Origin: Octopus sinensis
Lineage: Eukaryota
Direction of reading: 5' to 3'
DNA length: 64,000 nucleotides
Assembly (NCBI RefSeq): GCF_006345805.1
Contig: NC_042997.1
Coordinates: 114,576,001-114,640,000 of the forward strand
Shown: one piece after another, positions 16,700-62,372 of the stretch
How the letters are laid out: the number at the start of each line of letters is the position of its first letter
Numbering within the stretch: the stretch's first letter is position 1
Program-made: the position numbers and the translations under genes
Notes under the pieces: generated by a model
Told to the model about the DNA's origin: nothing
The model's input: the letters and a program-made list of their open reading frames with translations, nothing else
Databases searched by the model: none

Positions 16700-16762
16700 T
16701 GACTGGACATTTTATAGAAACATCACCTCTGTGCAAAGACTTTCATTGCCAAAATGCACACA
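16700..16762 (+). CDS. Gene P candidate exon, 63 nt ([21 protein letters not shown])
   Basis: Acceptor tttttttatcatttcag, donor A|gtgagt. Symmetric phase 1, with C-x4-C. Confidence 0.6.
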
Positions 16763-17942
16763 GTGAGTATTGCATTTTCATTTTTTCTCAGTCCTTCATC
16801 ATCATCATTTAATGTCCTCTCTCCATGCTGACATAGATCAGACGGTTTGATTGGAACTGATGAGCCCGGTTCCAGTCTGATTTGGCATAGTTTCTATAGT
16901 TAGATGCCCTTCCTAATGCCAACCACTCCAGGAGTATAGTGGGTGTTTTTATGTGCCACTGGCACAAGTGCCATTTTCATGACACCAGCAATGACCATGA
17001 CTACACTTCATGGGTGCCTTTAACATGACACTGGCAACGATCACAACTAAGATTCACAGGTGCCTCATGCCGGTGGCACGTAAAAAGCACCATCTGATTA
17101 TGGTCGATACCAGCTCCTCTGGCCCCTGTGCCGGTGGCACGTAAATAGCACCCACTACACTCTTGGAGTGGTTGCCAATAGGAAGGGCATCCAGCTGTAG
17201 AAACACTGCCAGATCAGATTGGGGCCTGGTGCAGCCTCCTGGCTTCCCAGACCCCAGTCGAACCATCCAACTCATGCCAGAATGGAATATGGACGTTAAA
17301 CGATGACGATGATGATATAGGGTGCAGTGAATAAACTCTCATCTAAATTACACAAAAATGAAAATAACATTGACATCTCAGGCCACATGGGAAGATGAAT
17401 GGAGGCATAACATCGCCATCACTAGTGATCACTCGAAGCACCATGATGTTGACTGGATGTTTGATTTTTATCACTTTCGGTACATGTCCTCATATTGACA
17501 GGCAAACACTCTAAAATGTTTGTATTGGAGCTTCCAGTGTAAATGCCAAACAGTACAGCATGTCATTTCCAAATTTCTGGCAGACCAAATTGCATCATGG
17601 TGCTGTTTTTCTCAGAGACAATACCCAACTGACCCTACTATACTGTGTAGTCAACAAAATCAAAAACAAACGATGCACATGCGTGAAATTAAAAATATAA
17701 AATAGCCACAGTTTACCCATCATACCCTGTGTGTGTGCGCACGCCTGTGTATTCCTCCTCCCCTTCCTTCTCCCCCTCCTCTCTCCCCCCTCCTCTCCTC
17801 CCCCTCTTCTCCTCTCTCCACACTACACCACACGACTTTACACATCACATCATATATGATGTGCCATACTAATACATACTAATACATACACCAACCCTAT
17901 ACATACACACGTCCAGACCTCTCATACGCACTAATACTCTCT

Positions 17943-17983: not shown

Positions 17984-20900
17984 ATACATACTAATACGTA
18001 CTAATACATACTAATACATACACCAACCCTATACATACACACGTCCAGACCTCTCATACGCACTAATACTCTCTCATACACACACACACACACACACACC
18101 CTTATGTTGGAGCTGGTCACTCAACCCTATTATCTCCCCTAATTTCGCTCTCGCGTCTCATGTTTGATCTTTGACTTCTGGCCGAAATCAGATCGCCATG
18201 TTGGTTCGTTAGTTACTGCACGCATTTTTTTTCTCTCCTTCTTTCTGTGTTTTTTTCTCTCTGTGTATCTTTCTGTTGAAGAGCGTAGGCTCGAAACGTT
18301 AAAGACTTGTTTTATTTATATTTCCTGAGCGCCATACTAATACAATTGTTTGTTTGTTTTCCACCTGCCTTCGTCTTTTGTCTATTTTCATAAAGCTTCC
18401 CGTTATATATATATATATATATATACTCACACACATGATTATGCATGTGTCTTTGTGCTTGTGTCCCCATAGATTGGATGTTCAGTGTTGGTTTGTTTAT
18501 GTTCAAATAACTTAGCAGTGTTGGCAAAAGAGATCAATAGAGTAAGTGCCAGACTTAAGAAATAAGTACCGGGATTGAAATCATTTCAAGCAAATATTTC
18601 TGTTAATTTCATTAATGAGATTAGAAAAGCAAAACTGTTAAATACACAATCAAGGCTGTTTACTTTTAGAAATGTAGATGCTTTGAGAAATATGGCCTTT
18701 TTTTATATCTAACCAAAGACTTTTTCACACAAAATATTCATTTTAAATTTTGGCCCAAGGTCAGCAATTTTGAGGATAGCAGGTGGTAGGGGGTGGGGGG
18801 CTAGTCGATTGCATCAACTCCAGCACTCAACCGGTACTTATTTCATTGACCCCAAAACGATGAAAGGCAGAGCTGGGCCTTGGCGGAACTTGAACTCAGA
18901 ACATAATGACAGACAAATGTTGCTAAGCATTTTGCCCGGCATGCTTACAATTCTGTCAGCTCGCTGCCTTAATAATAATAATGATAATAATAATAATAAT
19001 AATGCCCTGATGCAGTACCAGGCAATGGCTCTCATGGCTTCTGATCTTAACTGATTGGAAGTGTTATCATGTACATTGTTTTGTCTTGGTATAAAAGATG
19101 GGCTACAGCAAATATTCTGCTCAATACCACAGATTTGCTTGTCAGTTGTTTGACCTTAACCAGTTGAGCATGTCCCTTAGTGGCTGACGATATGTGCATC
19201 TCTGATCACGAGCAGAAGTAGTGGGGGAGCATCATAGCCATGTGTTGAGAGGGATTCTTTGGGGTTTGAATAATTCACCTCTGGAAATATGGGTGGTTCT
19301 TTCAACATCCTTAAACAACCCTTATTCAGGGACCGTTGAGCGTTTGAGCGGGAGGGCTACTCAACCTGAAGAAAATTCTAACTGGGCCCCACCTGCAAGG
19401 TCATGTGCTGTTTATCTTGATATGAGATCACCATGTCGCGCACATATGGTTGTGATGCATGTGCCTGGTGTGCCTTTATCAGACGGGTAGTCATGATGGG
19501 TATATTGGGCTTCGTATATTTTACCCCAGTGTCACTTTGATGGCATGAACTGCTCTCTCACTCAATAATAATAATAATAATAATTACCCTGATGCAGTAC
19601 CAGGCAGTGGCTCTCATGGCTTCTGATCTTAACTGATTGGAAGTGTTATCTTGTACATTGTTTTGTCTTGGTATAAAAAATGGGCTACAGCAAATATTCT
19701 GCTCAATACCACAGATTTGCTTGTCAGTTGCTTGACCTTGACCAGTTTAGTATGTCCTCTTAGTGGCTGGTAATTTGTTCATCTCTGATCATGAGCAGAA
19801 GTAGTGGGGGAGCATCATAGCCATGTGTTGAGAGGAATTATTTGGGGTTTGAATAATTCACCTCTGGAAACATGGGAGTAAGAGTAAACCACAATCCAAT
19901 GTTTTCCCATTGTTTTACTTTGATGTCATCCACATGCCTCTTTCATCTGCTTCCTCAGCATCTTTTGTTACACCTTTCCCACTGCAGCTTTGTACCGTTT
20001 TACGTAGCTTTTTTTCTCATCTTCCATATATCTTCCTTGTTATTGTTATTGTCTTCATCACAATTATCATCATCATCATTATCTTCATCATTATTTTCGT
20101 TATTATTATTTATCATCATTATTGCTATCATCACTATCAAAATCATCATCACTGCTGTCATTATTGTCATTATTATCACCAACATCTTTATCATCATCAT
20201 CATCATCATCTTCATCATCGTTATTGTTATCATCATCCTCATTGTCATCATTGTCACCACCACCCTCATCATCATCATTATTGTCATCGTTGTCATCATC
20301 AACATTATCATCATGCTCAACATCATCATCATCATTGTCAAGATTATTATCCTCCTCCTCCTCCTCCTCATCATCATCATCATCATGACTGTCATCTTCA
20401 GTTTGCCTTCAAACTTAATTTATCCCATTCTTTTCTTCTTTCTTCCTTTCTGTCTAACCCTAATATATTTTCTTTGATATTTTCTTCCAGTGAACCCAGA
20501 AATTTTTCGCATTTGTCAACAAATTGGTTGTTACAATGAAAACCCAAGTAAGAATCACAATTATTTTCTAGTAATGAACATTTGTACCATAATCTGTAGT
20601 AATCATAATTGTCACCACCATCATCATCATAAGTCTTTCCAAGCACAGCATATCGCCAAACGTCTCGGTCACTTGTCATATACATATATACATATATATA
20701 TACTAGCAGTATCACCTGGCGTTGCTTGGGTTTGTTTCAACCCTTAAGAATTGGAATTTTTGAAAAGTAAAAATTTTGCATTATGTAGCTTGTTATTCTC
20801 TTTAAGTGAACATTTTTTTGGTTGAAATACACTGGAAAATGGCAACACAGCAGTAAAAAAATCGTAAAAAATAGGGATTTTCATAGAAAAAGCACCTTTT

Positions 20901-22623: not shown

Positions 22624-25600
22624 CATATACATATATCTATTTCACGTTGCTCCAGTTCACTCAGCTGTAGAAATGAGTTGCGACGTCACTGGTGCCAAGC
22701 TGTATCGACCTTTGTCTTTCCCTTGGATAACACTGGTGGCGTGGAGAGTGGAGGCTGGTATGCAAGGGCGACTGCTGGTCTTCCATAAACAACCTTGCCC
22801 GGACTTGTGTCTAGGAGGGTAACTTTCTAGGTGCAATCCCATGGTCATTCATGACCGAAGGGGGTCAAATAAAAAAAAATACATATATAAAATATCTTTT
22901 TGTTATTCTGCTGTGTAAGAGCCAGTGACACTATAGATAGATACATCATATTTGCTTTAGTGTCAGATCTGCTTGTATATGATTGATAAACAAAGTTTTC
23001 AATCTGCATTTGAAGTTATTATATTTTATCAATGAAATAAAAATGATCACTAATAAAAATTTTCTCATTTCTACAGGACCATATCCTCCCCCAATAAATT
23101 CTCCACCAGGAAACTTTCCACCAGTAAACTATCCACCAGGAAACTTTCCACCAGGCAACTCTCCAACAGGAAACTCTCCGCCAGGAAACTCTCCACCAGT
23201 AAACTATCCACCAGTAAACTATCCACCAGTAAACTATCCACCAGGAAACTTTGCACCAGGCAACTCTCCACCAGGAAACTCTCCGCCAGGAAACTCTCCA
23301 CCAGTAAACTATCCACCAGGAAACTATCCACCAGGAATCTTTCCACCAGGAATCTTTCCAGGCAACTCTCCACCAGTAAACTTTCCACCAGGAAACTCTC
23401 CACCAGTAAACTTTCCACCAGGCAACTTTCCACCAGGAAACTCTCCAGCAGGAAACCCTCCACTAGGCAACTCTCCACCAGGAAACTTTCCACCAGTAAA
23501 CTTTCCACCAGGAAACTCTCCATCAGGAAACTTTCCGCCAGGAAGCTTTCCACCAGGAAACTATCCACCAGGAATCTTTCCCTCAGGCAACTCTCCAGCA
23601 GTAAACTTTCCACCAGGCAACTCTCCAGCAGTAAACTTTCCACCAGGCAACTCTCCACCAGGAAACTCTCCACCAGTAAACTTTCCATCAGGAAACTATC
23701 CACCAGGAAACTTTGCACCAGGAATCTTTCCCCCAGGCGACTCTCCAGCAGTAAACTTTCCACCAGTAGACTTTCCACCAGGAAACTATCCACCAGGAAA
23801 CTTTCCACCAGGCAACTCTCCACCAGTAAACTCTCCACCAGTAAATACTCCACCAGTAAACACTCTACCAGGAATCTTTCTCCCAGGCGACTCTCCAGCA
23901 GTAAACTTTCCACCAGTAGACTTTCCACCAGGCAACTCTCCACCAGTAAACTTTCCACCAGGAAACTATCCACCAGGAAACTTTCCACCAGGAATCTTTC
24001 CACCAGTAAACTCTCCACCAGTAAACTCTCCACCAGTAAACTCTCCACCAGTAAACACTCCACCAGTAAACACTCCACCAGTAGACTTTCCACCAGTAGA
24101 CTATCCACCAGGCAACTCTCCACCAGTAAACTTTCCACCAGGAAACTATCCACCAGGAAACTTTCCACCAGGAATCTTTCCACCAGTAAACTCTCCACCA
24201 GTAAACTCTCCACCAGTAAACACTCCACCAGTAAACGCTCCACCAGTAGACTTTCCACCAGTAAACTATCCACCAGTAGACTTTCCATCAGGCAACACTC
24301 CGCCAGTAAACTATCCGCCAGTTCCACCATATTATGATTCAGGTAATGTTTTTTGAAAGCTTGTTATTTCAATGTTTTAGACAAATACTTGTTTTTGATT
24401 AACTGGATAATTGTTTTTCTATTGAACTCTCACACAGACTAAACTGCTATCCTACCATACTGTCACTCACTAATATGCTACAAATTTTGCCAGTCGTGGC
24501 CAATGCCAGTGCCGCCTGATGGACACCTGTGCTGGTGGCACATAAAAAGCACCAGTCAAGCATGGCCGATGCTAGTGCCACCTGATGGGCACCTGTGCTG
24601 TTGGCACATAAAAAGCACCAATCAAGCATGGCCGATGACAGTGTTGCCTGACTGGCATCCATGCCAGTGGCACATAGAAAGCACCATTCAAGCGTGGCTG
24701 ATGCCAGTGCCACCTGACTGGCTCCCATGCCAGTGGCATGTAAAAAGCACCATTCAAGTGTGGCTGATGCCAGTTCCCCCCTGACTGGCACCCATGCTGG
24801 TGACATAAAAAGCACCATTGGAGTGTGGTCTATGCCAGTGCCACCTAACTGGCTCCCATGCCGGTGGCACATAAAAAGCACCATTCAAGCGTGGCCGATG
24901 CCAGTGCCACCTGACTGGCTCCCATGCCAGTGGCATGTAAAAGCACTCACACCACTCTCGGAGTGGTTGGCATTAGGAAGGATATCCAGCTGTAGAAACC
25001 TTACTAAATCAAACTGGAACCTGTGCAGCTTCCCAGTTTGCCAGTCCTCAATCAAATCGTCCAACCCGTGCCAGGATGGAAAACAGATATCAAATGACAA
25101 CAATGGTGATGATGACTATTTGAAGAACTTGAAATGTATTTGAACCAAACATTTCACATTCTCTTATGCTGTGTATGTACTTTTAGCTTTCATTGCTATC
25201 ATTCTCTACGTGACTTCTATGTCTGCTTTTTGTCCCCACTTTTAACTTTTTCCAACATGCTTTTAGTGCACCTGAGCAGGGTTGAGTTCATCATCATCAT
25301 TATTATTGTTATTTATCTGCGGCTTTATATAGCTATGGTACAACCTCACCTGGAATTTGCATCACCAGTCTTGCCCAGGATATTAATCATCTGGAAGTCA
25401 TTCAGCGACGTGCAACCAAGAGAATACCCTCCATCAGGCATTTGCCATATTCTGAACGTCTTGCTTCCCTGGGCATGGATACATTGAAACTCTGACGTCT
25501 GGCAGCTGACTTGGCAGACACCCATAAAATTATTAACCATCTTACAAACAATAACTCTGAGCACCTTTTCAAACTCCATCTGTCTAACACTCATGGACAT

Positions 25601-27696: not shown

Positions 27697-29898
27697 ACAT
27701 AATATATATATTAGTGGTTTTATCTCTAATTTAATATCAAGTGATCACGTGACCGACCAGACCATCAGATGTTTTACACATCGCTGGTCACAATGCATTC
27801 ACATTGTTTTAGCCTTCAAATGACGTCACCCCGCTGGCTAAGCGTGCAGGCCAACAGAAGAAAGAGTGAAAGAAAGAGTACAGCAGGGATCACCACCCCC
27901 TGCCGGAGCGTCATGGAGCTTTTAGGTCTGGGAATCGAAACCGCAATCCTACGACCGCGAGTCCGCTGCCCTAACCACTAGGCCATTGTGCCTCCACCTA
28001 ATTTAATATATATATTATATATATTTATACTGTAAAATTAGATTTAATCCTAAATCTAATTTTTTTCCCTGTAAGTTTGGATTTACTCCCTAATATTATT
28101 ATTATTATATATATATATATATATATATGTTGTAGTTGTGTTATCTGTGCCGGTGGCACGTAAAAAGCACCATCTGAACGTGGCCGATGCCAGCACCGCC
28201 TTGACTGGCTTCCATGCCAGTGGCACGTAAAAAGCACCCACAAGGGCATCCAGCTGTAGAAACACTGACAAATCAGACTGGAGCCTGGTACAGGCTCCTG
28301 GCTTCCCAGGCCCCAGTCAAACCGTCCAACCCATGCAGTATGGAAAACGGATGTTAAATGATGAAAGAAAAAATGAAAGAAAGAAAGAAAGAATATATAT
28401 ATGACAGGCTTTTTTTCAGTTTCTGTCTACCAAATCCATTCACAGGATATGATAAAGAATGGAAGATTCTTGCCCCAAGGTGCCGAGTGGTGGGACTGAA
28501 CCTAGAGCCATGTGGTTGGGAAGCAATCTTCTTACCACACAGCCATGCTGTGCCTATGCATATTTTAATTTTACTGGCCAATAGATAGAGGTTGTGAGAA
28601 CTGATTTGCATATGATTTGCATGTTAAGTCTTTTATCTTACATCTTTTATTTGTGTCCATCATTAGATTGTAGCCATGCTGGAGCACCACCCTGAAAAAT
28701 TTTCAGTTGAATGAATCGACCCCAGTGCTTATCTTTTTTAAAGCCTGATGCTCATTCTATTGGTCTTTTTTGCTGAACTGCTAAGTTATGGGGATGTAAA
28801 CACACCAACACTGGTTATCAAGGAGTGGTGGTGGACAAACCCAGACACAAAGACCCACACACACGCATGCATGCATGCACACATGCATGCACGCACGCGC
28901 ACATACACACACAATGGGTTTCTCTCAGTTTCTGTCTACCAAATCCACTCACAAGGCTTTGGCCAGCCCATGGGTCTAGCAGAGGATACATTTTCAAGGT
29001 GCTAAGCAGTGGGACTGAACCCAGATCCATGTGGTTGTGAAGTGAACCTTTTACCATACAGCCATCACCAGTAAAAATTTAATCTGTGCTGTGAGGGTTC
29101 AATCGGGTGGTCATGTCTGGGTTATTTCAGATGCGACCATTTTATCAATGGCTGTTAACATGTCAGTATTTGAAAGATCTTCTCATTTTGGTTTCAATTC
29201 TACTTAAATTTCACATCACAGAAAGGACTCTTCATTTCCCTGCTGTGTTCCCTTGAAGCTCTTCCTTAGAATCATTAGATTTACCAATAATAAATCTTCT
29301 AATTTCCACAGGGCCATATTCTCGACCACCTCCATCAACGTTTCCACAAGCATTTCCACCAACAATGTATCCGTCGCTTCCACCGTTTTATGATCCAGGT
29401 AATATTTTAGCCGTTTTACTTTCACATTATTCTCTCTAATATAAAGCTTATTTCAAATTCCACTGAGGTTGACTTTACCTTTCATCCTTTCGGGGTTGAT
29501 TAAATAGGTACCAGTTACGCACTGGGTTAATGTAATTGACTTGATTCTTTTGTCTGTCCTTGTTTGTCCCCTCTATGTTTAGCCCCCTGTGGGCAATAAA
29601 GAAATAATATAACAGACAATTGGAACCTGACCAGCCCTGTCAAACTGTCCAACCCATGCTAGCATGAAAAACAAGTGTTAAACGATGATGGTGATGTGAT
29701 TGTATATTTGATGATGTGATTACTCTTTTACTTGTTTCAGTCATTTGACTGTGGCCATGCTGGAGCACCGCCATTTTAGTCGAGCAAATCAACCCCAGGA
29801 CTTATTCTTTGTAAGCCTAGTGCTTATCCCATTGGTCTCTTTTGCCAAACTGCTAAGTTACAGGGACGTAAACACATCAGCATCAGTTGTCAAGCACA

Positions 29899-32900: not shown

Positions 32901-33380
32901 CAACGGACATTAAATGATGATGATGATGATGATGATGAATTAAAACAGTTTTTGTATTCCGTCAGTAAGAAAAGTGACAACTTACCAAAATAATTCTTCT
33001 AATTTCTACAGGACCGCATTCTCCACCAATGATGCAGCCATCACTTCCTTTTGTACCACATGCACCAGCAACTGGTCCACCATATTATGGTAATGTTTTA
33101 ATTTTTAACTATTAAATTTTTATAAAGGCTTGTGTCAGCCTCTCCAGTACTAAACAAACTTAGGCCACCTTCAGTTCTATGATGCAAAGCATCTCATCCT
33201 GATGTGTTCACAGGCACTGGTGTGGGTGTGTGGCAAGAAGCTTGATTCTCAACCAGATGGTTCCAGGTTCAGTCCCTCTGTGTGGTAACTTGGGCAGTTG
33301 TCTTTTGTTATTGCCTCAGGCTGACCAAAGCCTTGTTAGTGGATTTGGTAGATAGATGCTAAAAGAGGCTTTGTCACTTA

Positions 33381-52098: not shown

Positions 52099-55000
52099 CT
52101 GGTTGTGGTTGATTTTGTTGTTGCTGCTGTTGTTGTTGCTGCTACTGCTCTAGTTGTGGTTGATTTTGTTGTTGCTGCTGTTGCTGTTCCGCCTCCTCCA
52201 CGGGAGTGGCAGGGGGAGACACAATCGTCGGTTGTGGAGGCATGCAGGCCTGACACTGAAAAGTCCAAGATTTAAGCTGAACCATCTTCCAGAGTCTATC
52301 CATCATAGCATTATGATGGCTCTTTTTTTGGCCTGGGATCTTCTGAAAATCCGTGGCACATTGGAGTCAGACAGAGATGAGACATGTCCCACATTCGACC
52401 CAGCAATTATGGAACGTATTTTCGGGTTCCGTACAGATGTGGCAGGTGTGATTTTCTGGGCAGTGTTCTATTTTGGAGCAGCGACCAGTCTTATCGCACT
52501 CCACTATGGATTCCACCATGGCGATTTTGTTGCTTCTGGTCATCCGTAGAGACAGAAAATGCCCTCATCATTACTGTAACTCCTTTCATTTATCTCTTCG
52601 AGATTATCCTTTCTACAGATTTCATTATATTATGTATGTATGCATGTGTGAACAGACACATGTATGAATTTATGCATGCATGAATGTGCGTGTGTGTGTG
52701 TGTGCATGTGTGTGTATTTGTTGGTTGGCTGCCATTTGACGTGGTGGAGAATACTCTCTCAAAGCTCTGGGTGTTAAAACACCTGAAAGTCATGGAGAGG
52801 CAAGATAAATCACTTCCAATCCCATCCAGGAATGATAAGCACCTATGGATACACACGCACACATACACACACTCATACAAATATATATTTATATAGATAT
52901 GTTTGTGTGTGTGTATGTGTATGTTTGCATATGCAAAATAAATTATGCACTATAAATATACATATATCAAATATGCAAATAATACAAATTAAAATCATTA
53001 GCATGTTCATGGATATCTTAATTACAATAATGACTTTGATTTATTCTAAATACAGTCCTTTTTTTTTTATAGTTAAACGCTGACTTCAACAAGTGCAATT
53101 GTATAGTAGCTTTGTCCAAATGGTTGGAAGCTATTGGTTTGTCTGCCAATGATGGAACTTACTTTAAGAACTGGCTCAACGACATTGTAAAACCAGATAA
53201 AGGAGGTAAGTTTTCTACACATGTACAGGTGGAGACGTGGGTGTGTGGTAAGAAGCTTGCTTCCCAACCGCATGGTTCTAGGTTCAGTCTCACTATGTGG
53301 CACCTTGGTGGGGCAAGTGTCTTTTACTATAGCATCAGGCTGACCAAAGCCTTGTGAGTGGATTTGTTAGATGTACACTAAAAGAAAGCCTGCCATATGT
53401 GTGTGTGTGTGTGTGTGTGCTTCTATGTTTGTCCTCCACCACCACTTCACAACTGCTGTTGGTGTGTTTACATCCTCATAATTTAGCGATTCAACAAAAA
53501 ATAGAATAAGTAGAATGCTTAAAAAGAAAAAAAATAAGTATAGGCATTGATTCATTTATCTAAGAATTTCTCAAGGCTGTGCTCCAGCATGGCCCCAGTC
53601 TAATGACTGGAACAAGTAAAAAGTAAAAGATAAACACTAAATGATATAGAACCTTGTTTGTCTCTGATTCATTCATCACTGATCCAGAATAACATGGTAC
53701 ACATAATTGTGAACCCTGTTGTGCTTATCAGGGATTGAACTATGATAGCACAAGTTGGTAATCAAAGATTCTGCTTGTACAACAAAAGTGTGCCCCAGCA
53801 ACTACTTGACTATATTTTATGGATTTACATCAGTGGTTCTTAACTGGGGTCCACATGGCTTTTGGTGGGGTCCATATAAGATTTTGTCTTTAAAATCCAT
53901 GTGCAATAAGATGGTTATGCTTCTACAACACACAAAATATTTGAACAATTTTTTATATGATTTCTAATAATATTTAATCATAAAAATGTAATAGGATTTC
54001 TTTAAAAAAAATTCAGTGGGTATGAGGGTCCAGTAGAGTAAAATAGGAACGAAAGGGGCCGATAAGCAAAAAATGACTGAGAACCACAGATTTACATAAT
54101 TAACCCTTTTGTTAACCCTTTCGTTACCAACCTAGCTGAAGCCACCTCTGGCTCTGAGTACAAATGTCTTGTTTTCATAAGTTTTGAATTAAAATCTTCC
54201 TCCAAACCTTAGTCACAATTTATGTTCCTAACACTAGCTTAATGATAACTAAGTTATTTTACTGAATTCATTGTTATATTTAAAATCAATTGAAAGAATC
54301 ACAGAACATCTCAAGATAAATACGGTAACAAAAGGGTTAAAATATATAATAGAGAAACAATTCTTAACCCTTTCATTAGCAACCCAGCTGAAACCAGCTC
54401 TGGCACTGTAATACAATGTCTTGTTTTTATGTTTTGAATTAAAATCTTCCACTAAACCTTAGTCGCAATTTATGTTCCTAATACTAGCTGAATGATAACT
54501 AAGTTATTTTACTAAATTCTTTGTGATATTTAAAGTAATTAAAAGAAACACAGAGCATCTCAAAATAAATACAGTAATGAAAGGGTTAACATGGGACCAG
54601 TGAACAGAAAAAAATACGAATTCACCTGATCCTAACACGATGCAGACAAGTGTCTTTTTTCTGCAGGAAAAGGTAGAACTTATGAAGAAAATAAGTGACA
54701 GCAGAAGCTGCTTTGCTGTTGTGGGCTGCAAGCTTAGTATTAATGAATCTAGCATTTGTTCCATTTACAAAGCTGCCGTGCCAGTGGCACTTAAAAGGAA
54801 CCATTCGAGTGTGATCGTTACCAGCGTCGCCTTACTGGCACTTGTGCCTGTGCTAGTAGGGTGCCAAGAGCACCATCCAAGCGTGATCATTGCCAGAGCA
54901 GCCAACTGGCTTCCGTGCCAGTGGCATGTAAAAGGGCACCATTCGAGCGTGATCGTTACCAACGTTGCCTTAATGGCACCTGTGCCGGTGGCATGTGTAA

Positions 55001-57487: not shown

Positions 57488-57532
<45 letters not shown>

Positions 57533-58022
57533 TATTATTATTATATATTATTATTATTATATTATTCATTTAACGTCCGCTTTCCATGCTAGCATGGGTT
57601 GGATGAATGACTGAGGGCTGGCGAACCAGATGGCTGCACCAGGCTTCAATCTTGATCTGGCAGAGTTTCTACAGCTGGATGCCCTTCCTAATGCCAACCA
57701 CTCCGAGAGTGTAGTGGGTGCTTTTACATGCCACCGGCATGGAGCCAGTCAGGCAGTACTGGCAACAACCTCACTCAAATCTTTTACACATACCACTGGC
57801 ACAGGTGCCAGTAAGGAGATGCTGGTAACAATTGCGCTTGAATGGTGTCTTACGTGCCACCAGCACGGAGGCCAGATAGCCGCTCTGGCAACAATCACAC
57901 TCGGATGGTGCTCTTAATACTCTACTAGCACGGGGCACAAGTGCCAGTAAGGCAACGCTGGTAATGATCACGCTCGAATGGTGCCTTTTAAGTGCCACTG
58001 GCACGGAAGCCTATTATTATTA

Positions 58023-58080
<58 letters not shown>

Positions 58081-59266
58081 GAAGGTAGTGATCTAGGAGC
58101 ATCATTTGTGTGGCAGCAATTCTTTTGACTCTGTACATTCTGAGCTCAAATTCCATGAATGGATCAACATTGCCTTTCATTCTTTTAGTGTCAAGAAAAT
58201 AAGGACAGTAAGCTGGCAGAATTGTTAGTGTGCCGGGCGAAATGCTTAGTGGTATTTCATCTGTCTTTATGTTCTGAATTCAAATTCCGCCGAGGTCAAC
58301 TTTACCTTTCATCCTTTCAGGGTCGATAAATTAAGTACCAGTGATGCACTGGGGTCAATGTAATCAACTTAATCCATTTCTCTGTACTTGTTTGCCCTCT
58401 CTGTGTTTAACCCCTTGTGAGTAGTAAAGAAATAGGTATTTCATCTGTCTTTATGTTCTGAGTTCAAATTCCATCGAGGTTGATTTTGCCTTTCATCCTT
58501 TCGGGGTCAATAAATTAAGTACCAGTTGCATACTGGGGTTGATCTAATCAACTGGCTCCCTCCTCAAAACTTTTAGGCCTTGTGCCTAGAGTAGAAAAGA
58601 AAATAAGTACTGGAGGTGATGTCATTTGTGTGTGTGTGTGTGTGTGTGTGCGTGTGTGCATACGTGCATGCGCGTGTGTGTTTGTGTGTGTGTGTGTGTA
58701 TGCACTAAACATTGAAATTTGTTGTGCAACTTATAAAAATGATGAAAACTGATATTTATTCTTTGTTATTCTGTAAATAACATGTTTTTCTTTATTTACA
58801 TATACATATATATTTATACATATTTCAGATAACTCGAATAATATCAGGTACTCTCAACAGCAACAACAACAACAATCCAACTACAACCCTTATGGATTCT
58901 ATGGAGATCCTTATCTGATGTACAACCCACACTATTTCAACAGTGACCCCTATGCACCAAGTGTGAACAACATGTATGACAGTTGGTCATCTGGGATGTC
59001 TTATCCTTTAACTTTTGGTAAGTAGAATAAATTTCTTTCATCACTGTCTCAGCAAATGGAGGGAGAAAGTTTAGTAAGACTGAACATGGCTGTGTGGTAA
59101 GAAGTTTGCTTCCTGACCACATGGTTCTGTGTTCAGTCTCACTGCATGGCACCTTGGGCAAGTGTCTTCTACTATAGCCTCAAGCCAACCAAAGCCTTGG
59201 GAATGGATTTGGTAGATAGAAACTGGAAGTAACCCATTGTATATATATATGTGTGTGTGTGCATGT

Positions 59267-59491: not shown

Positions 59492-62372
59492 CACATAATG
59501 TAACCTTCCTTTTCTAAGTTTCTCAAAACATCTGTATCATGATATGTGATTCTTAATTATTCAAGAAGCTTAGAATTTCTCTTGGAAGTTTCTAGAATGT
59601 CTAACATTCCATTAATAAAAACAGCTTGCTAACCCAGCTCTTCACTTCTTAGTCAATTAGACTTAGAGCCATTCTCGTCATTGCTATGTCCATCTATTTC
59701 TCTATGCCACATGTCTGAAAGCCACCACTTAGCTGTTGTTTTACATTTGCTATCTCTGAACCTTCTTGCATAGATTACTTCATTCAACTAGATTCTACAT
59801 TTTGATTCTATGTATCATCATCGACCAGTAAATAAAATATATTTTCATGTAGTAAATATATAGATCGTGAAATTATTCTTCATCTCTTTACGAACTATTG
59901 TAATAACATACACGCAGCCACATCAACACCTTGTACTGACTATATATTCCCACTACACATGCATACAGACATACATCATCATCATCATCGTTTAACGTCT
60001 GTTTTCCGTGCTGACATGGGTTGGACGGTTCGTCTGGGGGCTGGGAAGCCAGGGGGCTGCACCAGCCTCCAGTCTGATCTGGCAGTGTTTCTACAGCTGG
60101 ATGCCCTTCCTAATGCCAACTACTCCGAGAGTGTAGTGGGTGCTTTTTTACATGCCACCAGCACAGGGGCCAGAGGGGGCTGGCATCGACTACAATCAGA
60201 TGGTACTTTTTAGGTGCCACCAGCACAGGAGCCAGTCAAGGCAGCACTGGCATCAACACATTCGGATGGTGCTTTCTACCTGCCACCGGCATGGGGATCA
60301 CAACTACAATTTCCATTTGATTTTGATGTACTTGACTCAATAGGTCTCCTCAAGCACAGTATGTCGCCCTACGATCCAAGGTACATTTGAGTGGGCTGGT
60401 TATGTGACACTGGTGTAGGTTACAGCTGTGGACTCACTTTATTTGCCAAGTCTTCTCAGCCACAGCATATCTCCAGAGGTCCCTGTCATTTATCATTGCC
60501 TCTGTGAGGTCCAATGTCTGAAGGTCATGCTTCACCACCTCATCCTATGTCTTCCTGGGTCTCCCTCTATCCCAGATTCCTTCAACTGTTTGGGAGTGGC
60601 ACATCTTCACACAGCTCTCCTCTTCCATCCGTAGTATATGACCATACTAGCGCAAACGTCTCTCTTGCATGCCACATCCAATGTTTCTTATGTCCAACAT
60701 TTCTCTCAGGGCACTTACACTCTGTCGTGACCAATACTCAGCTACCTGGAACGCACTGATTATCACTTGTGTTTACATCACTGCAATGCAAGGCTGCATA
60801 TTTTTTGTACAGGTCTATGTACACATAGTTCGGTCAGATGGTGGGGGCATGCACCCTTGCAGTGTGTTGCTGCATTCACTATTCATTAGTATATTCCCTT
60901 ACACTTGCCTCCTTATGAGAGCTCAAAATCTCTCGTGGAAGCGTCATCCAACTAAAGTACAAATATATGGGAAACTACCACCTGTATCATCTCTTGTGAA
61001 AGGTAGAAAAGTCCAGTTTGCTGGACATTGTTGAGAGCTGAAAACGAGGTAATTTCTACTCTTCTCCTCTGGAAGCCATCTGCTCGCAATACCAGAGGGC
61101 GCACATTCTCCTACCCTGATGTAATCTCCAGCGATACAGGTATCCAGCAACAGGACCTCCGTAATGCTACGATGGACCATATAGTCTGGCATAACAGTAA
61201 ATTCCATTGTCTCAACCACGGTCAAACAATGATGATGATGAGTATATTCCCAGGTCCTCCCAGGTGACCCGTCAAGCAGAGTCATATTTAGTCCTCACCT
61301 CTCTGAAAAACCTCATCCTGCATGACCGTGTGTCATGTGGTCAACCAACATGGGCTGTCAACCCAGCTAGATTCTCAGTAAAGCGAATATGATGAGCAAG
61401 GTCTAAATTAGAAAATCAAGCAACACAACCAAGTAATCTGAGCTAAGCTCCTGAATCAGTAACTGGGATGCATCCTTTAACAGAATCCATCCCAGTTTCA
61501 GAGGAAAGTTTGTTGGTTAAATACAGAATATTTTTCACTGTTATATTTTTATTATTTATTGATCATAGGTGCAGGAGTGGCTGTGTGGTAAGTAGCTTGC
61601 TTACCAACCACATGGTTCCGGGTTCAGTCCCACTACGTGGCACCTTGGGCAAGTGTCTTCTACTATAGCCTCGGGCCGACAAAAGCCTTGTGAGTGGATT
61701 TGGTAGACAGAAACTGAAAAAAGCCCGTTGTATATATGTATATATATATATGTATGTGTGTGTATATGTTTGTGTGTCTGTGTTTGTCCCTCCAACATCG
61801 CTTGACAACCAATGCTGATGTGTTTACGTCCCCGTAACTTAGCGGTTCAGCAAAAAAGACTGATAGAATAAGTACTAGGCTTACAAAGAATAAGTCCTGG
61901 GGTCGATTTGCTCGACTAAAGGTGGTGCTCCAGCATGGCCACAGTCACATGACTTAAACAAGTAAGAGAGTAAAAGAGTATCATGTTATTAAATTTTACT
62001 CTAAACATTATACCAACCATAAAACAATATCATTGTGTGTACTTCGAGTCTTTTTGGACATGTTATTTGGGTATGTTAGGGGTAGAACTTGAGGTCTTTT
62101 CGGAAGCAAATACTTGTGATAAATGAGGACAGATGTACGAATCTTGTGTTTTTATCATGTTCAGTTATAATATAATTGTAATCCAACATTTTTTTTTTTC
62201 ATTTCAGTGCCTGGTACCATTTATCCCAACATCGATCGACCATATTCTAATCAACATCAAGACCAGTGGCCTGTTCCAAGCAAGAATTTCGATGCTGCTT
62301 CCCAAGATGATAAAAAACCAATTCCTCTCGTCCAACAGAATTCTACAACACCCAATACTCCTAATCCTCCGC
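16700..62372 (+). CDS. Gene P: multi-exon proline-rich repeat protein, 5'- and 3'-incomplete (join 16700-16762, 20491-20547, 23077-24342, 29312-29398, 33012-33089, 36495-36808, 53073-53205, 58829-59017, 62208-62372)
   Basis: Nine exons (2352 nt, 784 codons) with canonical GT-AG sites splice into one stop-free frame. All junctions are phase 1 except 36808/53073 (phase 0). No ATG exon was found. Confidence 0.75.
16800..17315. mobile_element. Two RTE 3'UTR fragments, head-to-head
   Basis: Minus copy about 16800-17050 and plus copy about 17055-17315, each ending in (GAT)n. Confidence 0.7.
18268..18305 (+). ncRNA. Minimal hammerhead-like motif with A6 mutated
   Basis: TCTTT-CTGTTGA-A-GAGC gtag GCTC-GAAA-CG-T-T-AAAGA. 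It lies downstream of an AC-rich tandem duplication (about 17865-18110). Confidence 0.55.
19004..19877. repeat. 582-bp unit in 1.5 tandem copies, bounded by (AAT)n
   Basis: The start ccctgatgcagtaccagg occurs at 19005 and 19587. The second copy is truncated near 19877. Confidence 0.85.
20020..20395. repeat. Compound (ATC/ATT/CTC)n trinucleotide tract
   Basis: Degenerate triplet run that produces low-complexity ORFs on both strands. Confidence 0.9.
20491..20547 (+). CDS. Gene P candidate exon, 57 nt ([19 protein letters not shown])
   Basis: Acceptor tttgatattttcttccag, donor A|gtaaga. Symmetric phase 1, with a second C-x4-C. Confidence 0.6.
20700..21500 (+). mobile_element. Probable Helitron/HINE-like element with a nested mariner 3' fragment (21036-21469)
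   Basis: Starts TACTAGCAGTATCACCTGGCGTTGCTTGGG. The insert encodes HHDNAS...[17 protein letters not shown]...RWKEVI, with tgtta at both junctions and an (AC)n tail after it. Confidence 0.55.
21876..21978. repeat. About 100-bp hairpin / mini-MITE
   Basis: Arms ggttgtatactgtcaatctaacatgaacgtgacagtag / ctactgtcacattcatgttatattgacagtatacaacc. Confidence 0.75.
23077..24342 (+). CDS. Gene P repeat exon, 1266 nt: about 80 PP[G/V][N/D/I][S/F/Y/T] pentapeptides
   Basis: Lies within ORF 22983-24356. Acceptor tttctcatttctacag, donor G|gtaatg. The 15-nt repeat keeps frame throughout. Confidence 0.9.
24490..25115 (+). mobile_element. RTE 3'UTR with expanded internal tandem array (about 65-70 bp units, about 7 copies)
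   Basis: Repeated gtggcac(a/g)taaaaagcacc units precede the conserved ...ccaacccgtgccag...gatgatga end. Confidence 0.8.
25311..25903 (+). mobile_element. 5'-truncated CR1-type LINE
   Basis: [16 protein letters not shown]...[33 protein letters not shown] plus 3'UTR and (ATT)n. Same family as 48440-52570. Confidence 0.88.
26810..27300 (+). mobile_element. RTE 3'UTR copy
   Basis: About five internal units plus the conserved terminus. Confidence 0.8.
27300..27712. repeat. (TA)n/(TACA) microsatellite tract
   Basis: Near-pure AT dinucleotide run. Confidence 0.95.
27740..27998 (-). mobile_element. tRNA-derived SINE (third body type)
   Basis: A box tggcctagtggttag and B box ggtttcgattccc. A related tail occurs at 38530-38790. 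Confidence 0.75.
28395..30112 (-). mobile_element. Cluster of major-family SINE copies and fragments flanking gene P exon 29312-29398
   Basis: Reverse-strand matches at about 28395-28560, 28640-29065 and 29720-30112. Confidence 0.7.
29312..29398 (+). CDS. Gene P exon, 87 nt ([29 protein letters not shown])
   Basis: Acceptor tcttctaatttccacag, donor G|gtaata. Ends resemble those of exon 23077-24342. Confidence 0.88.
31615..31890. repeat. 15-bp minisatellite (ccacatctcattgag, about 18 copies)
   Basis: Direct tandem inspection. Confidence 0.9.
32088..32245 (-). mobile_element. Degenerate copy of the tRNA-head/hammerhead element
   Basis: Reverse complement of ggcagtgacctgaataac...gagaacccagg...CTGAAGA cagctggagggtataacagcc AAAA cgttgtgtt. 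Confidence 0.7.
33012..33089 (+). CDS. Gene P exon, 78 nt ([26 protein letters not shown])
   Basis: Acceptor ttcttctaatttctacag, donor G|gtaatg. Confidence 0.88.
33220..33640 (+). mobile_element. Major tRNA-derived SINE
   Basis: Head, central (TG)n and tail are collinear with 61572-61980. Confidence 0.8.
36495..36808 (+). CDS. Gene P exon, 314 nt ([11 protein letters not shown]...[15 protein letters not shown]...KKLFGFLNK)
   Basis: Within ORF 36476-36874. Acceptor ttctgcttataacag, donor AAG|gtgaat, phase 1 to 0. Confidence 0.85.
36924..37182 (+). mobile_element. Composite element: short inverted 3' end, tRNA-like head, (AAT)n, hammerhead-bearing tail
   Basis: Flanked by a 12-bp direct repeat, tttgtgctttga (36912-36923) / tttatgctttga (37183-37194). 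It splits a second-family SINE. Confidence 0.8.
37091..37136 (+). ncRNA. Minimal type I hammerhead motif
   Basis: GATAC-CTGATGA-A-GGCTG gagggtatat CAGCT-GAAA-CG-T-T-GTGTT, with an extra A after A9, AACGTT palindrome and GUU site. Confidence 0.7.
38081..38297. mobile_element. Tc1/mariner-type MITE
   Basis: TIRs cagggtgtggcagaagtaacaccct / agggcattacttctgctgcaccctg. Confidence 0.75.
38855..38932 (-). ncRNA. Degenerate hammerhead-like motif downstream of the PLE ORF
   Basis: AACT-CTGATGA-GCATAAGG[long loop]CCTTGCGC-GAAA-CTGA-T-T-GGT. Same strand as, and about 650 bp 3' of, the PLE remnant. Confidence 0.5.
39590..40442 (-). pseudogene. Penelope-like element remnant (RT C-terminus plus GIY-YIG)
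   Basis: [10 protein letters not shown]...[14 protein letters not shown]...[19 protein letters not shown]...[22 protein letters not shown]...[16 protein letters not shown]...[21 protein letters not shown]...CPH. Contains frameshifts and stops. Confidence 0.9.
40452..40700 (+). mobile_element. tRNA-derived SINE
   Basis: Degenerate A and B boxes, and shares gtgttcttgagcaaaacacttcat with 10815-11075. Confidence 0.65.
40893..41286. mobile_element. Fold-back element with degenerate hammerhead motifs
   Basis: The left arm on the minus strand reads CTGAAGA-ATCTAC taga GTAGAT-GAAA-GTGC-T-A. The right arm has a mutated core. A partial extra copy lies at about 41400-41475. Confidence 0.65.
41290..43897. 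repeat. About 2.6-kb degenerate (TA)n tract
   Basis: Almost only A/T, with interspersed C. Confidence 0.95.
43897..44570 (+). mobile_element. 5'-truncated CR1/L2-group LINE (second family) with (ATCA)n tail
   Basis: [13 protein letters not shown]...[12 protein letters not shown]...[22 protein letters not shown]...GPQLFNILP...RAAASNSL. Confidence 0.85.
44571..46939. repeat. About 2.4-kb degenerate (TA)n tract
   Basis: Same composition as the tract at 41290-43897. Confidence 0.95.
47656..48275 (+). mobile_element. 5'-truncated RTE-clade LINE ending in three C2H2-like fingers, (TAA)n tail
   Basis: [14 protein letters not shown]...TWEGIAID...VHEGTATFE, then CNVC...[35 protein letters not shown] and [18 protein letters not shown]. 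Frameshifted. Confidence 0.85.
48510..51300 (-). pseudogene. LINE ORF2 (APE endonuclease plus reverse transcriptase)
   Basis: Frameshifts near 51000, 50270 and 48705, and a TAG at 50828-50826. Confidence 0.92.
51293..52543 (-). pseudogene. LINE ORF1: PHD-like finger, poly-Gln tract, coiled coil, RRM-like region
   Basis: One frame of 417 codons with two internal stops (TGA 52369-52367, TAG 52144-52142): CHIC...WVECGTC...V*LQC...FQCQAC, a Q-rich tract, then VIAIGVPE...[16 protein letters not shown]. Confidence 0.8.
53073..53205 (+). CDS. Gene P exon, 133 nt ([44 protein letters not shown])
   Basis: Acceptor ccttttttttttatag, donor G|gtaagt. Phase 0 to 1, matching both neighbours. Confidence 0.8.
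53235..53632 (+). mobile_element. Major tRNA-derived SINE
   Basis: Collinear with 61572-61980. Begins about 30 nt after the donor of exon 53073-53205. Confidence 0.8.
53831..54089. mobile_element. hAT-type MITE
   Basis: Ends cagtggttct / agaaccacag, with a perfect 8-bp TSD ATTTACAT (53823-53830, 54090-54097). Confidence 0.85.
54116..54585. mobile_element. Two tandem piggyBac-type MITEs (54116-54336, 54368-54585)
   Basis: Each reads TTAA|CCCTTT...AAAGGG|TTAA, and the two copies are homologous. Confidence 0.85.
54630..54770 (+). pseudogene. pogo/Tigger transposase N-terminal HTH fragment
   Basis: [37 protein letters not shown] resembles the Tigger LQEKVELL...INESSVRTI motif. Confidence 0.6.
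54770..55235 (+). mobile_element. RTE 3'UTR copy
   Basis: Internal unit array plus (GAT)n terminus. Confidence 0.8.
55465..55907. mobile_element. Head-to-head pair of the tRNA-head/hammerhead element with 12-bp TSD
   Basis: Minus copy 55468-55635 (no tRNA head) and plus copy 55665-55907 (A box tggcgtagtgg, B box gagtttgattcc). TTCATTTAGTCA occurs at 55453-55464 and 55908-55919. Confidence 0.85.
55940..56235 (-). mobile_element. RTE/BovB-like LINE 3' fragment
   Basis: GATCYEE...[20 protein letters not shown] followed by gtcgtcatcaacaatgacagac. Confidence 0.75.
56574..56790. repeat. 14-bp minisatellite (ccacgataggtgaa, about 15 copies)
   Basis: Direct tandem inspection. Confidence 0.9.
57031..58012 (-). 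repeat. 535-bp-period tandem duplication of an RTE 3'UTR copy, bounded by (ATT)n
   Basis: The ORF track is identical at offset 535 (57095/57630 and 57236/57771). Confidence 0.9.
58829..59017 (+). CDS. Gene P exon, 189 nt ([10 protein letters not shown]7[47 protein letters not shown])
   Basis: Acceptor catatttcag, donor G|gtaagt. Open and symmetric phase 1. Confidence 0.82.
59975..60890 (-). mobile_element. 5'-truncated RTE LINE (ORF2 end plus full 3'UTR)
   Basis: [22 protein letters not shown]...[14 protein letters not shown]...[13 protein letters not shown], then the unit array and (GAT)n tail seen in many other copies in the window. Confidence 0.88.
60895..61240 (+). mobile_element. RTE/RTE-X-like LINE 3' fragment
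   Basis: [15 protein letters not shown]...IYGKLPPVS...QFAGHC*R...LLLWKP...[12 protein letters not shown], with a (GAT)n tail. Confidence 0.75.
61572..61980 (+). mobile_element. Major tRNA-derived SINE, intact reference copy
   Basis: A box tggctgtgtgg, B box gggttcagtccc, central TA/TG microsatellite, tail ...gagtaaaagag. Confidence 0.88.
62208..62372 (+). CDS. Gene P exon, 165 nt ([26 protein letters not shown]...PNTPNPP)
   Basis: Acceptor ttttttttttcatttcag, donor C|gtaagt. The gene continues beyond the window. Confidence 0.82.

What the first reader, a model, noticed from the sequence alone, without database searches (positions are those of the whole stretch)
16700..62372. Large uncharacterised proline-rich multi-module gene spanning more than 45 kb (gene P)
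Seen: 784 stop-free codons from nine exons. The order is two C-x4-C motifs, about 80 pentapeptides, two short Pro/Tyr modules, a His-rich linker, a roughly 110-aa non-repetitive segment with Trp and CNC, a Q7 plus Tyr/Asn/Pro/Met segment and a Pro-rich segment. N-glycosylation sequons (NLT, NNS, NAS, NST) are present. Inference: a lineage-specific extracellular or biomaterial protein (cuticle, egg casing, glue or mucus). xTG/HF at the first exon could be the end of a signal peptide.
Basis: partly seen in the sequence, partly recalled or inferred. Interest (0 to 1): 0.72.

Follow-up and report, generated by a model that had tools for sequence, protein, structure and literature searches.

The report
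Octopus-only proline-repeat modular protein gene
This is a real octopus gene, already in RefSeq as 'uncharacterized', that encodes a long, mostly disordered, fast-evolving protein: about 82 proline-rich five-residue repeats, small folded modules, and an end domain (just outside the window) that resembles the vitamin-B12-carrier beta domain.

Summary
Nine + strand exons between 16700 and 62372 have canonical AG/GT sites and splice into 2352 nt, or 784 stop-free codons.

The window is Octopus sinensis. The gene is RefSeq LOC115218319 ('uncharacterized' / 'basic proline-rich protein-like'), and the O. bimaculoides orthologue is LOC106871109. An exhaustive HMMER search of 1.84 billion representative proteins found no credible relative outside Octopus.

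The gene does not end at 62372. Three more coding exons lie beyond the window and encode a ~104-aa C-terminal domain. That domain matches the beta domain of intrinsic factor/transcobalamins (hhalign 88-90%, E about 2e-6; 0 of 200 shuffles reach it).

Against the orthologous locus, the frame is kept, there are no stops and gap totals are multiples of 3. Evolution is fast (dN/dS about 0.7).

No signal peptide was found, and the RefSeq start codon is probably not the true start.

A secreted, glycosylated, spacer-plus-binding-domain protein is the best reading, but the support is indirect. A biomaterial role is untested.

A 57-residue match of the middle domain to bacterial MltG is unproven, because an SH3 match of similar strength covers the same stretch.

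The parts
16700..16762 (+). Exon E1, 63 nt, phase 1-1. Encodes (x)[20 protein letters not shown], with the first C-x4-C motif.
   Evidence: AG/GT sites. The O. bimaculoides orthologue is at L082:133-189, the same length, open, with C-x4-C kept. There are 8 nonsynonymous and 0 synonymous differences. The peptide is absent from database proteins.
20491..20547 (+). Exon E1b, 57 nt, phase 1-1. Encodes (M)[18 protein letters not shown], with the second C-x4-C motif. The N-terminus of RefSeq isoforms X11-X13 lies here.
   Evidence: The junction codon with E1 is A|TG in O. sinensis but T|TT in O. bimaculoides.
23077..24342 (+). Exon E2, 1266 nt. About 82 pentapeptide repeats P-P-[G/V]-N-[F/S/Y/T], ending in VPPYYDSG.
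   Evidence: TRF finds 81.9 copies of a 15-nt unit. A 180-nt higher-order period appears in the 3' half. The same repeat type occurs in O. bimaculoides (P0005).
23155..23466 (+). GC-AG 'intron' inside the repeat exon, implied by RefSeq isoform X11 (312 nt).
   Evidence: This is the deletion consistent with the X11 protein that has GC...AG ends. It is flanked by direct repeats.
23422..23916 (+). GC-AG 'introns' inside the repeat exon, implied by X12 (23422-23901, 480 nt) and X13 (23422-23916, 495 nt).
   Evidence: Whether these are real splicing or an artefact is not decided.
29312..29398 (+). Exon E3, 87 nt, phase 1-1. Pro/Tyr module [30 protein letters not shown].
   Evidence: The splice flanks are paralogous to E2 and E4. 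Orthologue at L082:9956-10078.
33012..33089 (+). Exon E4, 78 nt, phase 1-1. Pro/Tyr module [27 protein letters not shown].
   Evidence: Orthologue at L082:11571-11666.
36495..36808 (+). Exon E5, 314 nt. His-rich linker, an acidic N/D stretch and the first ~65 aa of the folded middle domain ([15 protein letters not shown]...FLNK).
   Evidence: dN/dS is 0.46 against O. bimaculoides. The local MltG/YceG and Eps8-SH3 matches lie here.
53073..53205 (+). Exon E6, 133 nt, entered in phase 0. Second half of the middle domain ([10 protein letters not shown]...NDIVKPDKG).
   Evidence: Orthologue at L082:20933-21076. No similarity to the MltG catalytic region.
58829..59017 (+). Exon E7, 189 nt, phase 1-1. 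Q7 followed by a Tyr/Asn/Pro/Met low-complexity segment.
   Evidence: Orthologue at L082:23406-23627, 78.5% nt identity, 15 gap positions (a multiple of 3).
62208..62372 (+). Exon E8, 165 nt, phase 1-1. Pro/Gln/Asn/Thr-rich linker. It ends at a GT donor, so the gene continues.
   Evidence: RefSeq proteins continue with a 104-aa domain that is not in the window. In O. bimaculoides three further exons follow (L082:30138-30269, 32446-32616, 34882-34938).

Best explanation
The region is the larger part of a single, real protein-coding gene of Octopus sinensis. The gene is RefSeq LOC115218319 (orthologue LOC106871109 in O. bimaculoides). It is restricted to Octopus as far as the available protein libraries show.

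The product is about 870-890 aa or more and is modular:
- a short Cys-motif N-terminal region;
- about 410 residues of uncharged P-P-[G/V]-N-[F/S/Y/T] pentapeptides;
- two Pro/Tyr modules and a His-rich linker;
- a ~105-aa Lys- and Trp-rich middle domain, tentatively helical (low-confidence model);
- a Gln/Tyr/Asn-rich low-complexity segment;
- a ~100-aa C-terminal domain, encoded beyond the window, related to the beta domain of cobalamin carriers (intrinsic factor, transcobalamins; Pfam DUF4430 type).

Most likely mechanism (inferred, not shown): the protein enters the secretory pathway from a first exon not yet identified. The repeat array forms an extended, polyproline-II/beta-turn-rich spacer, possibly hydroxylated or glycosylated. 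The aromatic, His-rich and low-complexity segments mediate self-association or cross-linking. The two small folded domains, above all the C-terminal one, bind a specific ligand or partner.

The gene evolves fast (dN/dS about 0.7) while keeping its frame.
For: Shown:
- Exon structure and open frame.
- Identity to RefSeq proteins.
- Orthologous locus with the same exon order, no stops and gap totals that are multiples of 3. dS is 0.20, dN 0.14 and dN/dS 0.70, against syntenic intron identity of 80-89%.
- No relatives outside Octopus among 1.84e9 representatives.
- The repeat keeps P1, P2 and N4, while variation is concentrated at two nonsynonymous nucleotide positions.
- The repeat region has 0 Lys/Arg.
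- The C-terminal domain against the IF/TCN1/TCN2 beta domains gives hhalign probability 88-90%, E about 2e-6, 64 columns and 33% identity. None of 200 column shuffles reaches it (38.4 against 11.0 +/- 2.2).
- The top Foldseek PDB hit of a poor model is transcobalamin 2v3n, covering 97 of 104 residues (not significant).

Inferred (secretion):
- Class 1-1 exon phases (Patthy's rule).
- Four sequons conserved between the species.
- The known relatives of the C-terminal domain are secreted.
- Pro-Pro-Gly, found in about half the units, is the classical substrate motif of collagen prolyl 4-hydroxylase (established knowledge).
Against: - No signal peptide was found in the window or in RefSeq isoforms X11-X13.
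- The true 5' end is unknown.
- HMMER finds no Pfam DUF4430 or PDB hit for the C-terminal domain, and both AlphaFold models are unusable (pLDDT 33 and 38). The domain assignment therefore rests on one profile-profile comparison with very shallow profiles.
- That domain lies outside the window.
- No expression, proteomic or literature data were found.
- A dN/dS of 0.7 also fits a weakly constrained gene of little functional importance.
Confidence: 0.55

Rival explanations
1. It is an intracellular scaffold or condensate protein. The proline-rich array and the PP[Y/F]Y motifs act as ligands for SH3, WW, EVH1 or profilin-type domains. The Q/N/Y-rich segment drives phase separation. The middle domain is a protein-interaction module, possibly SH3-like.
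For: - RefSeq isoforms start without a signal peptide, and none was found upstream.
- PPYY and PPFY end E2, E3 and E4.
- A profile of the middle domain matches Eps8-family SH3 domains at E = 0.004-0.012.
- The composition of E7/E8 is Q/N/Y/S/P-rich.
Against: - The RefSeq start codon is not conserved: it is TTT in O. bimaculoides. The true N-terminus is therefore upstream and unknown.
- Class 1-1 exon phases, conserved sequons and a C-terminal domain related to secreted carriers all point outside the cell.
- Pfam SH3 models do not hit.
- The SH3 match is limited to Eps8 sequences and overlaps an equally strong MltG match.
- The low-confidence model predicts helices there.
Confidence: 0.2
2. It is a chitin- or glycan-associated structural protein. 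Its middle domain would descend from a fragment of a bacterial MltG/YceG lytic transglycosylase acquired by horizontal transfer. The fragment would be catalytically dead and serve as a glycan-strand-binding module that anchors the Pro/Tyr/His-rich protein in a chitinous structure such as the sucker lining, beak, radula or gut cuticle.
For: - E. coli YceG structure 2r1f at E = 0.0026 and 0.0016.
- NCBIfam NF007619 at E = 1.2e-5 (O. sinensis) and 3.8e-4 (O. bimaculoides); TIGR00247 at E = 0.03 for both.
- BLASTP against E. coli MltG residues 152-196 gives 37% identity and pairwise E = 4e-7.
- hhalign probability 64%, and 0 of 200 shuffles reach the score.
- A His/Tyr/Pro-rich composition is common in cephalopod hard-tissue proteins (from memory; not tested).
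Against: - Only 57 residues match (E. coli 152-209).
- The rest of the octopus domain shows background similarity to the region holding the catalytic E218.
- Pfam YceG does not hit.
- No bacterial genome encodes a closer relative by pattern scan.
- No MltG reached E < 0.001 in the exhaustive search.
- An unrelated fold (Eps8 SH3) matches the same stretch with a similar E-value. At least one of the two matches must be chance.
Confidence: 0.12
3. It is an annotation artefact: a chimera of separate transcripts, or a decaying, non-functional gene.
For: - dN/dS is high, at 0.70 overall and 1 or more in E1, E4 and E6 on small counts.
- Exons are no better conserved than introns.
- Many RefSeq isoforms differ only by GC-AG deletions between direct repeats.
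Against: - About 345 aligned non-repeat codons have no stop in either species, and all gap totals are multiples of 3.
- Splice sites and phases fit throughout.
- The same domain order occurs in two species' independent gene models.
- dS exceeds dN overall.
Confidence: 0.05

Closest known systems
RefSeq LOC115218319 (Octopus sinensis; XP_036359999/360000/360002, isoforms X11-X13) and LOC106871109 (O. bimaculoides, XP_014772898)
   Same: It is the same gene: 100% identity to the E1b-E8 translation. The orthologue is 67-71% identical, with the same module order.
   Different: RefSeq gives no function, and 'basic proline-rich protein-like' is only a compositional label. The RefSeq models listed here omit E1, start at a non-conserved junction ATG and carry deletions inside the repeat exon.
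Beta domain of eukaryotic cobalamin carriers (gastric intrinsic factor, haptocorrin/TCN1, transcobalamin/TCN2; Pfam DUF4430 type)
   Same: The C-terminal ~100 aa, encoded beyond the window, aligns over 64 columns at 33% identity. The conserved Ala, Phe, Gly, Trp, Leu and Gly positions are kept and the predicted strand/helix order is the same.
   Different: There is no alpha domain: the middle domain against the IF/TC alpha domain gives hhalign probability 0.15%. HMMER, Pfam and PDB searches give no hit. The rest of the architecture is unrelated. Ligand binding is untested.
Proline-rich tandem-repeat proteins with five-residue units (elastin-like VPGXG type, plant extensins, salivary proline-rich proteins)
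   Same: It has a long, uncharged or low-charge, Pro-rich short-period array that is expected to be extended or disordered. The Pro-Gly turn motif is in about half of the units. The Pfam Extensin_1 model scores 103.3 bits on the repeat.
   Different: The score is below the Extensin_1 gathering threshold of 105. There is no Ser-Pro4 motif, no Lys/Arg (so it is not 'basic'), and Asn is nearly invariant at position 4. The resemblance is in composition and is not homology.
Bacterial endolytic transglycosylase MltG (YceG, PF02618 / TIGR00247 / NF007619)
   Same: A 57-residue local match of the middle domain to E. coli MltG 152-209.
   Different: The match does not cover the catalytic Glu218 region. 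The Pfam model gives no hit. There is no transmembrane helix or LysM-like part. An SH3 match competes for the same stretch.

Membership tests
Cobalamin-carrier beta domain / DUF4430 (C-terminal domain, outside the window) | Sequence-profile similarity to the beta domains of IF, TCN1 and TCN2 | tested here: met
   hhalign probability 88-90%, E about 2e-6, 64 columns. None of 200 shuffles reaches the score, and the reversed sequence scores 7.4.
Cobalamin-carrier beta domain / DUF4430 (C-terminal domain, outside the window) | Passing the curated family HMM (Pfam PF14478) or matching solved members by HMMER | tested here: not met
   No Pfam hit at E <= 10. No PDB hit with a two-sequence profile at E <= 10.
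Cobalamin-carrier beta domain / DUF4430 (C-terminal domain, outside the window) | The fold itself | tested here: inconclusive
   The AlphaFold model has pLDDT 37.6. The top Foldseek PDB hit is transcobalamin 2v3n, but at E = 2.2.
Full cobalamin-binding protein (Cobalamin_bind, alpha6/alpha6 barrel plus beta domain) | Presence of the alpha domain | tested here: not met
   The middle domain against the IF/TCN1/TCN2 alpha domains gives probability 0.15% and a score at background. No Pfam PF01122 hit.
Full cobalamin-binding protein | Binding of cobalamin | not testable with these tools
   Needs recombinant protein and a binding assay.
MltG / YceG lytic transglycosylase | Match to the family model over the catalytic domain | tested here: not met
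   Only model positions 153-209 of 340 match, at 24.6 bits against a cut-off of 532. TIGR00247 scores 13.3 bits against 103.4. Pfam YceG gives no hit.
MltG / YceG lytic transglycosylase | Catalytic Glu (E218 in E. coli) and its surrounding motif | tested here: not met
   The downstream half of the octopus domain against MltG 200-340 scores 10.9, compared with shuffles at 9.5 +/- 1.9.
SH3 domain | Match to general SH3 family models | tested here: not met
   No Pfam SH3 hit. Only Eps8-family chains match, at E = 0.004-0.9.
Extensin (Pfam Extensin_1) | Gathering threshold of the family model; Ser-(Hyp)4 motif | tested here: not met
   103.3 bits (spliced model) and 76.1 bits (X12) against 105. 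The units are PP[G/V]N[F/S/Y/T], with no SPPPP.
Basic proline-rich proteins (the RefSeq name of isoform X11) | Basic residues within the Pro-rich repeats | tested here: not met
   0 Lys/Arg and 8 Asp/Glu in 406 repeat residues.
Secreted protein | N-terminal signal peptide | tested here: inconclusive
   None in the RefSeq N-terminus or in E1, and none predicted in 1-20490. The true first exon is unidentified, and the RefSeq start codon is not conserved.
Protein-coding gene under constraint | Frame preservation between species | tested here: met
   No stops, gap totals of 9, 15 and 21 nt, and dN/dS 0.70 with dS 0.20.

The most novel reading that the evidence does not exclude
The conserved middle domain is a relic of a bacterial MltG/YceG transglycosylase captured by an octopod ancestor through horizontal transfer. 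It would now serve as a non-catalytic glycan-binding module. In the same protein, the C-terminal transcobalamin-like domain would bind a corrinoid or other small ligand. That would make an animal protein assembled from a bacterial cell-wall-enzyme fragment, a B12-carrier domain and a newly expanded pentapeptide array.
Probability: 0.1. Interest if true: 0.75.

Novelty: new variant of a known kind. Interest (0 to 1): 0.4.

Why it matters
Cephalopod genomes hold many lineage-restricted genes of unknown function, and this is a well-defined example. It combines a very regular 82-unit pentapeptide array built by exon and repeat duplication, class 1-1 exon modules, evolution near the neutral rate with a preserved frame, and a terminal domain that links it to vitamin-B12 carrier proteins. 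If it is secreted, it is a candidate component of an octopus-specific secretion or matrix, and a natural proline-rich repeat polymer of interest for materials work. If the C-terminal domain binds corrinoids, this would be a B12-carrier-type beta domain outside deuterostomes, in a very unusual context. The practical gain here is a corrected gene model: E1 is included, the start codon is doubtful, the repeat-internal isoforms are doubtful, and three exons lie beyond the window.

Tried and rejected
- Pfam on the spliced protein, RefSeq proteins and single domains gave only a sub-threshold Extensin_1 hit and a PapG_N hit at E = 0.078, treated as noise.
- Exhaustive phmmer with the orthologue gave one extra hit, P0006, a bacterial T/V/A-rich 13-repeat protein. 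I rejected it as compositional.
- A word-based search for proteins containing the E1 peptide found none.
- A bacterial-genome pattern scan with the middle domain found no relative. A second scan with an MltG alignment, and the third protein search, returned only Enterobacteriaceae. A diverse MltG profile could therefore not be built.
- The middle domain against the IF/TC alpha domain showed no similarity.
- The second half of the middle domain against the MltG catalytic region showed no similarity.
- AlphaFold of the non-repeat part (single sequence) and of the C-terminal domain (two sequences) gave pLDDT 33 and 38, which is unusable. Foldseek on the latter was not significant.
- An ab initio scan for a signal-peptide first exon in 1-20490 returned only microsatellite-derived false positives.
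- Literature searches by LOC ids, repeat peptides and 'octopus + proline-rich' found nothing relevant.

Full report
**Source of the window.** The window is eukaryotic. It has about 37% G+C, long TA microsatellites, a LINE-type reverse transcriptase and SINE-like repeats. A protein search with the non-repetitive part of the spliced product returned a 100% identical RefSeq protein of Octopus sinensis. This is LOC115218319 isoform X12, 'uncharacterized protein', on a 213-Mb chromosome record. The search also returned a 67%-identical protein of O. bimaculoides, LOC106871109. Isoform X11 of the same gene is named 'basic proline-rich protein-like'.

**The observation.** I located nine + strand exons, each with a polypyrimidine tract, an AG acceptor and a GT donor:
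- E1 16700-16762
- E1b 20491-20547
- E2 23077-24342
- E3 29312-29398
- E4 33012-33089
- E5 36495-36808
- E6 53073-53205
- E7 58829-59017
- E8 62208-62372

Seven exons are multiples of three and lie between phase-1 introns. E5 and E6 are joined by a phase-0 intron.

All listed features are present:
- CKDFHC and CQQIGC.
- A 15-nt repeat of 81.9 copies.
- Two Pro/Tyr modules.
- [13 protein letters not shown].
- A ~105-aa Lys/Trp-rich segment with CNC.
- Q7 plus a Tyr/Asn/Pro/Met segment.
- A Pro-rich exon.
- The sequons NLT, NNS, NAS and NST.

E2, E3 and E4 share their acceptor and donor contexts (…TTCT[A/C]ATTTC[T/C]ACAG|G… and …[C/T][A/T]TATG…|GTAAT…). They are therefore products of exon duplication.

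**The repeat.** The consensus is P-P-[G/V]-N-[F/S/Y/T].
- Of the 15 nucleotide positions, two carry most of the variation. They are the second base of codon 3 (G/T, giving Gly/Val) and the second base of codon 5 (T/C/A, giving Phe/Ser/Tyr).
- Most third positions are nearly invariant, and 145 of 155 Pro codons are CCA. This indicates recent amplification or homogenisation of a few unit types, with Pro1, Pro2 and Asn4 kept.
- The 3' half has a 180-nt (12-unit) higher-order period.
- The array has no Lys or Arg, so 'basic proline-rich' is a misnomer.
- Pfam Extensin_1 scores just below its threshold (103.3 against 105). That resemblance is compositional.

**Extent of the gene.**
- RefSeq proteins continue after …NTPNPP with 104 residues (QVLVTF…INNTSV) that tblastn does not find in the window.
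- In the O. bimaculoides orthologous locus (L082) all nine exons occur in the same order, followed by three more coding exons. The first of these lies about 1.9 kb after E8, farther than the 1.6 kb of window that remains.
- The gene therefore runs past the right end of the window.

**The 5' end.**
- RefSeq X11-X13 begin with 'MNPEIF…', where the Met codon is formed across a splice junction (A|TG). E1 ends in A and could supply that base.
- In O. bimaculoides the corresponding codon is T|TT, so this Met is not a conserved start.
- E1 itself is the same length in both species, open, and keeps its C-x4-C motif and splice sites. No database protein of 431-1370 aa contains the E1 peptide.
- The true start probably lies upstream. 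I found no convincing first exon in 1-20490.

**RefSeq isoforms.** X11, X12 and X13 differ from the genome by in-frame deletions of 312, 480 and 495 nt inside the repeat exon. Each can be drawn as a GC-AG intron flanked by direct repeats. These may be real minor splicing. Template switching or repeat-length polymorphism is an equally good explanation. This is an inference and was not tested.

**Is it coding?**
- Syntenic introns of the two species are 80-89% identical. The exons are 74-94% identical, so they are no better conserved.
- About 345 aligned non-repeat codons contain no stop in either species, and gap totals are 9, 15 and 21 nt.
- Nei-Gojobori counts give dS 0.20, dN 0.14 and dN/dS 0.70. 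E5 (0.46) and E7 (0.53) are among the most constrained. E1 has 8 nonsynonymous and 0 synonymous differences.
- This is a real but fast-evolving gene.

**Homology.**
- phmmer of the orthologue against 1.84 billion representative proteins found only the two Octopus proteins and one bacterial repeat protein. I regard the latter as a compositional artefact.

*C-terminal domain.*
- Its pattern reminded me of the beta domain of cobalamin carriers. I recovered the true sequences of human intrinsic factor, TCN1 and two TCN2 beta domains from PDB search output and compared profiles.
- hhalign gives probability 88-90%, E about 2e-6, 64 columns and 33% identity.
- The score of 38.4 compares with 11.0 +/- 2.2 (maximum 16.8) for 200 column shuffles.
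- HMMER-level searches (Pfam, PDB) see nothing, and AlphaFold failed (pLDDT 38).
- Even so, the top Foldseek hit of that poor model among 350,542 PDB chains is a transcobalamin entry aligned over 97 of 104 residues. At E = 2.2 it is not significant.
- I consider the relationship likely (about 0.75-0.8). The octopus protein has no counterpart of the carriers' alpha domain.

*Middle domain.*
- A 57-residue stretch ([56 protein letters not shown]) matches E. coli MltG/YceG residues 152-209.
- The scores are PDB 2r1f at E = 0.0016-0.0026, NCBIfam NF007619 at E = 1.2e-5 and 3.8e-4, TIGR00247 at E = 0.03, pairwise BLASTP at E = 4e-7 and hhalign at 64%.
- Several results count against homology. Pfam YceG does not hit. 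The similarity stops before the catalytic Glu218 region. No closer bacterial relative exists in the collections searched. The same stretch matches Eps8 SH3 domains at E = 0.004-0.012.
- Two unrelated folds cannot both be homologous to one stretch, so these E-values cannot be taken at face value. I leave the middle domain unassigned.

**Mechanism.**
- Shown: the architecture, the lineage restriction, the preserved frame with fast evolution, and the likely relationship of the C-terminal domain.
- Inferred: secretion. The grounds are class 1-1 exons, four sequons conserved as sequons in both species and secreted relatives of the C-terminal domain.
- Inferred: an extended polyproline-II/turn-rich spacer role for the repeat. 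About half the units contain Pro-Pro-Gly, the classical prolyl-4-hydroxylase substrate, and about a third have Ser/Thr followed by Pro-Pro.
- Inferred: self-association through the Tyr-, His- and Gln/Asn-rich segments, and ligand or partner binding by the folded domains.
- The missing signal peptide is the main weakness. An intracellular scaffold role remains a serious rival.

**Verdict.** The finding is real and accurately described. It is already annotated, without a function. Interest is moderate.

Noticed in passing
window 48482-50272 (- strand), with adjoining ORFs 50265-50738 and 51293-51973 (- strand): A LINE-type retrotransposon sits inside the 16.3-kb E5-E6 intron. The 596-aa ORF hits Pfam RVT_1 at E = 3.4e-33. 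The two upstream ORFs have no Pfam hit.
   Followed up: partly
window about 40600-47000: A ~6-kb block of TA/TATATAC-type microsatellite with G+C down to 10-25% and strong skew lies in the same intron. It produces many long spurious 'YIYIYI' ORFs on both strands.
   Followed up: no
window 15197-15296: A run of 100 N (an assembly gap) lies 1.4 kb upstream of exon E1. An upstream first exon could be hidden in or near it.
   Followed up: no
window 63115-63468 (- strand): A 117-aa ORF looks like a mariner/Tc1-type transposase remnant. Pfam Transposase_1 scores E = 0.0018, below its threshold.
   Followed up: partly
window 17068-17316, 24833-25115, 27064-27267, 31177-31462, 55009-55244 and others: A dispersed SINE-like element of about 250-290 nt has many copies in both orientations. 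It translates to '…[19 protein letters not shown]…'-type pseudo-ORFs and also matches several places in the O. bimaculoides locus at 73-86% identity.
   Followed up: no
window 16700-16762 versus L082:131-189: Exon E1 differs at 11 of 63 nt from O. bimaculoides, while about 100 nt of flanking intron on each side are about 95% identical. Eight of its aligned codons differ, all nonsynonymous and none synonymous. This may be positive selection on the N-terminal Cys-motif region, or chance on small numbers.
   Followed up: partly
window 57345-57611 and 57880-58077 (with 57080-57379 and 57615-57914): A tandem duplication of about 535 nt in the E6-E7 intron carries a SINE-like element and a (TAT/ATA)n tract. 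The translated stretches are nearly identical.
   Followed up: no
window 39757-40344 (- strand): A 195-aa ORF in the E5-E6 intron (…[27 protein letters not shown]…) has no Pfam hit. It may be a fragment of another mobile element.
   Followed up: partly
L082 (O. bimaculoides) about 5437-5853 and the neighbouring N runs: The orthologous repeat exon is interrupted by assembly gaps (6590 N in the locus). This explains why the O. bimaculoides gene models are truncated at the 5' side (440 and 593 aa).
   Followed up: partly
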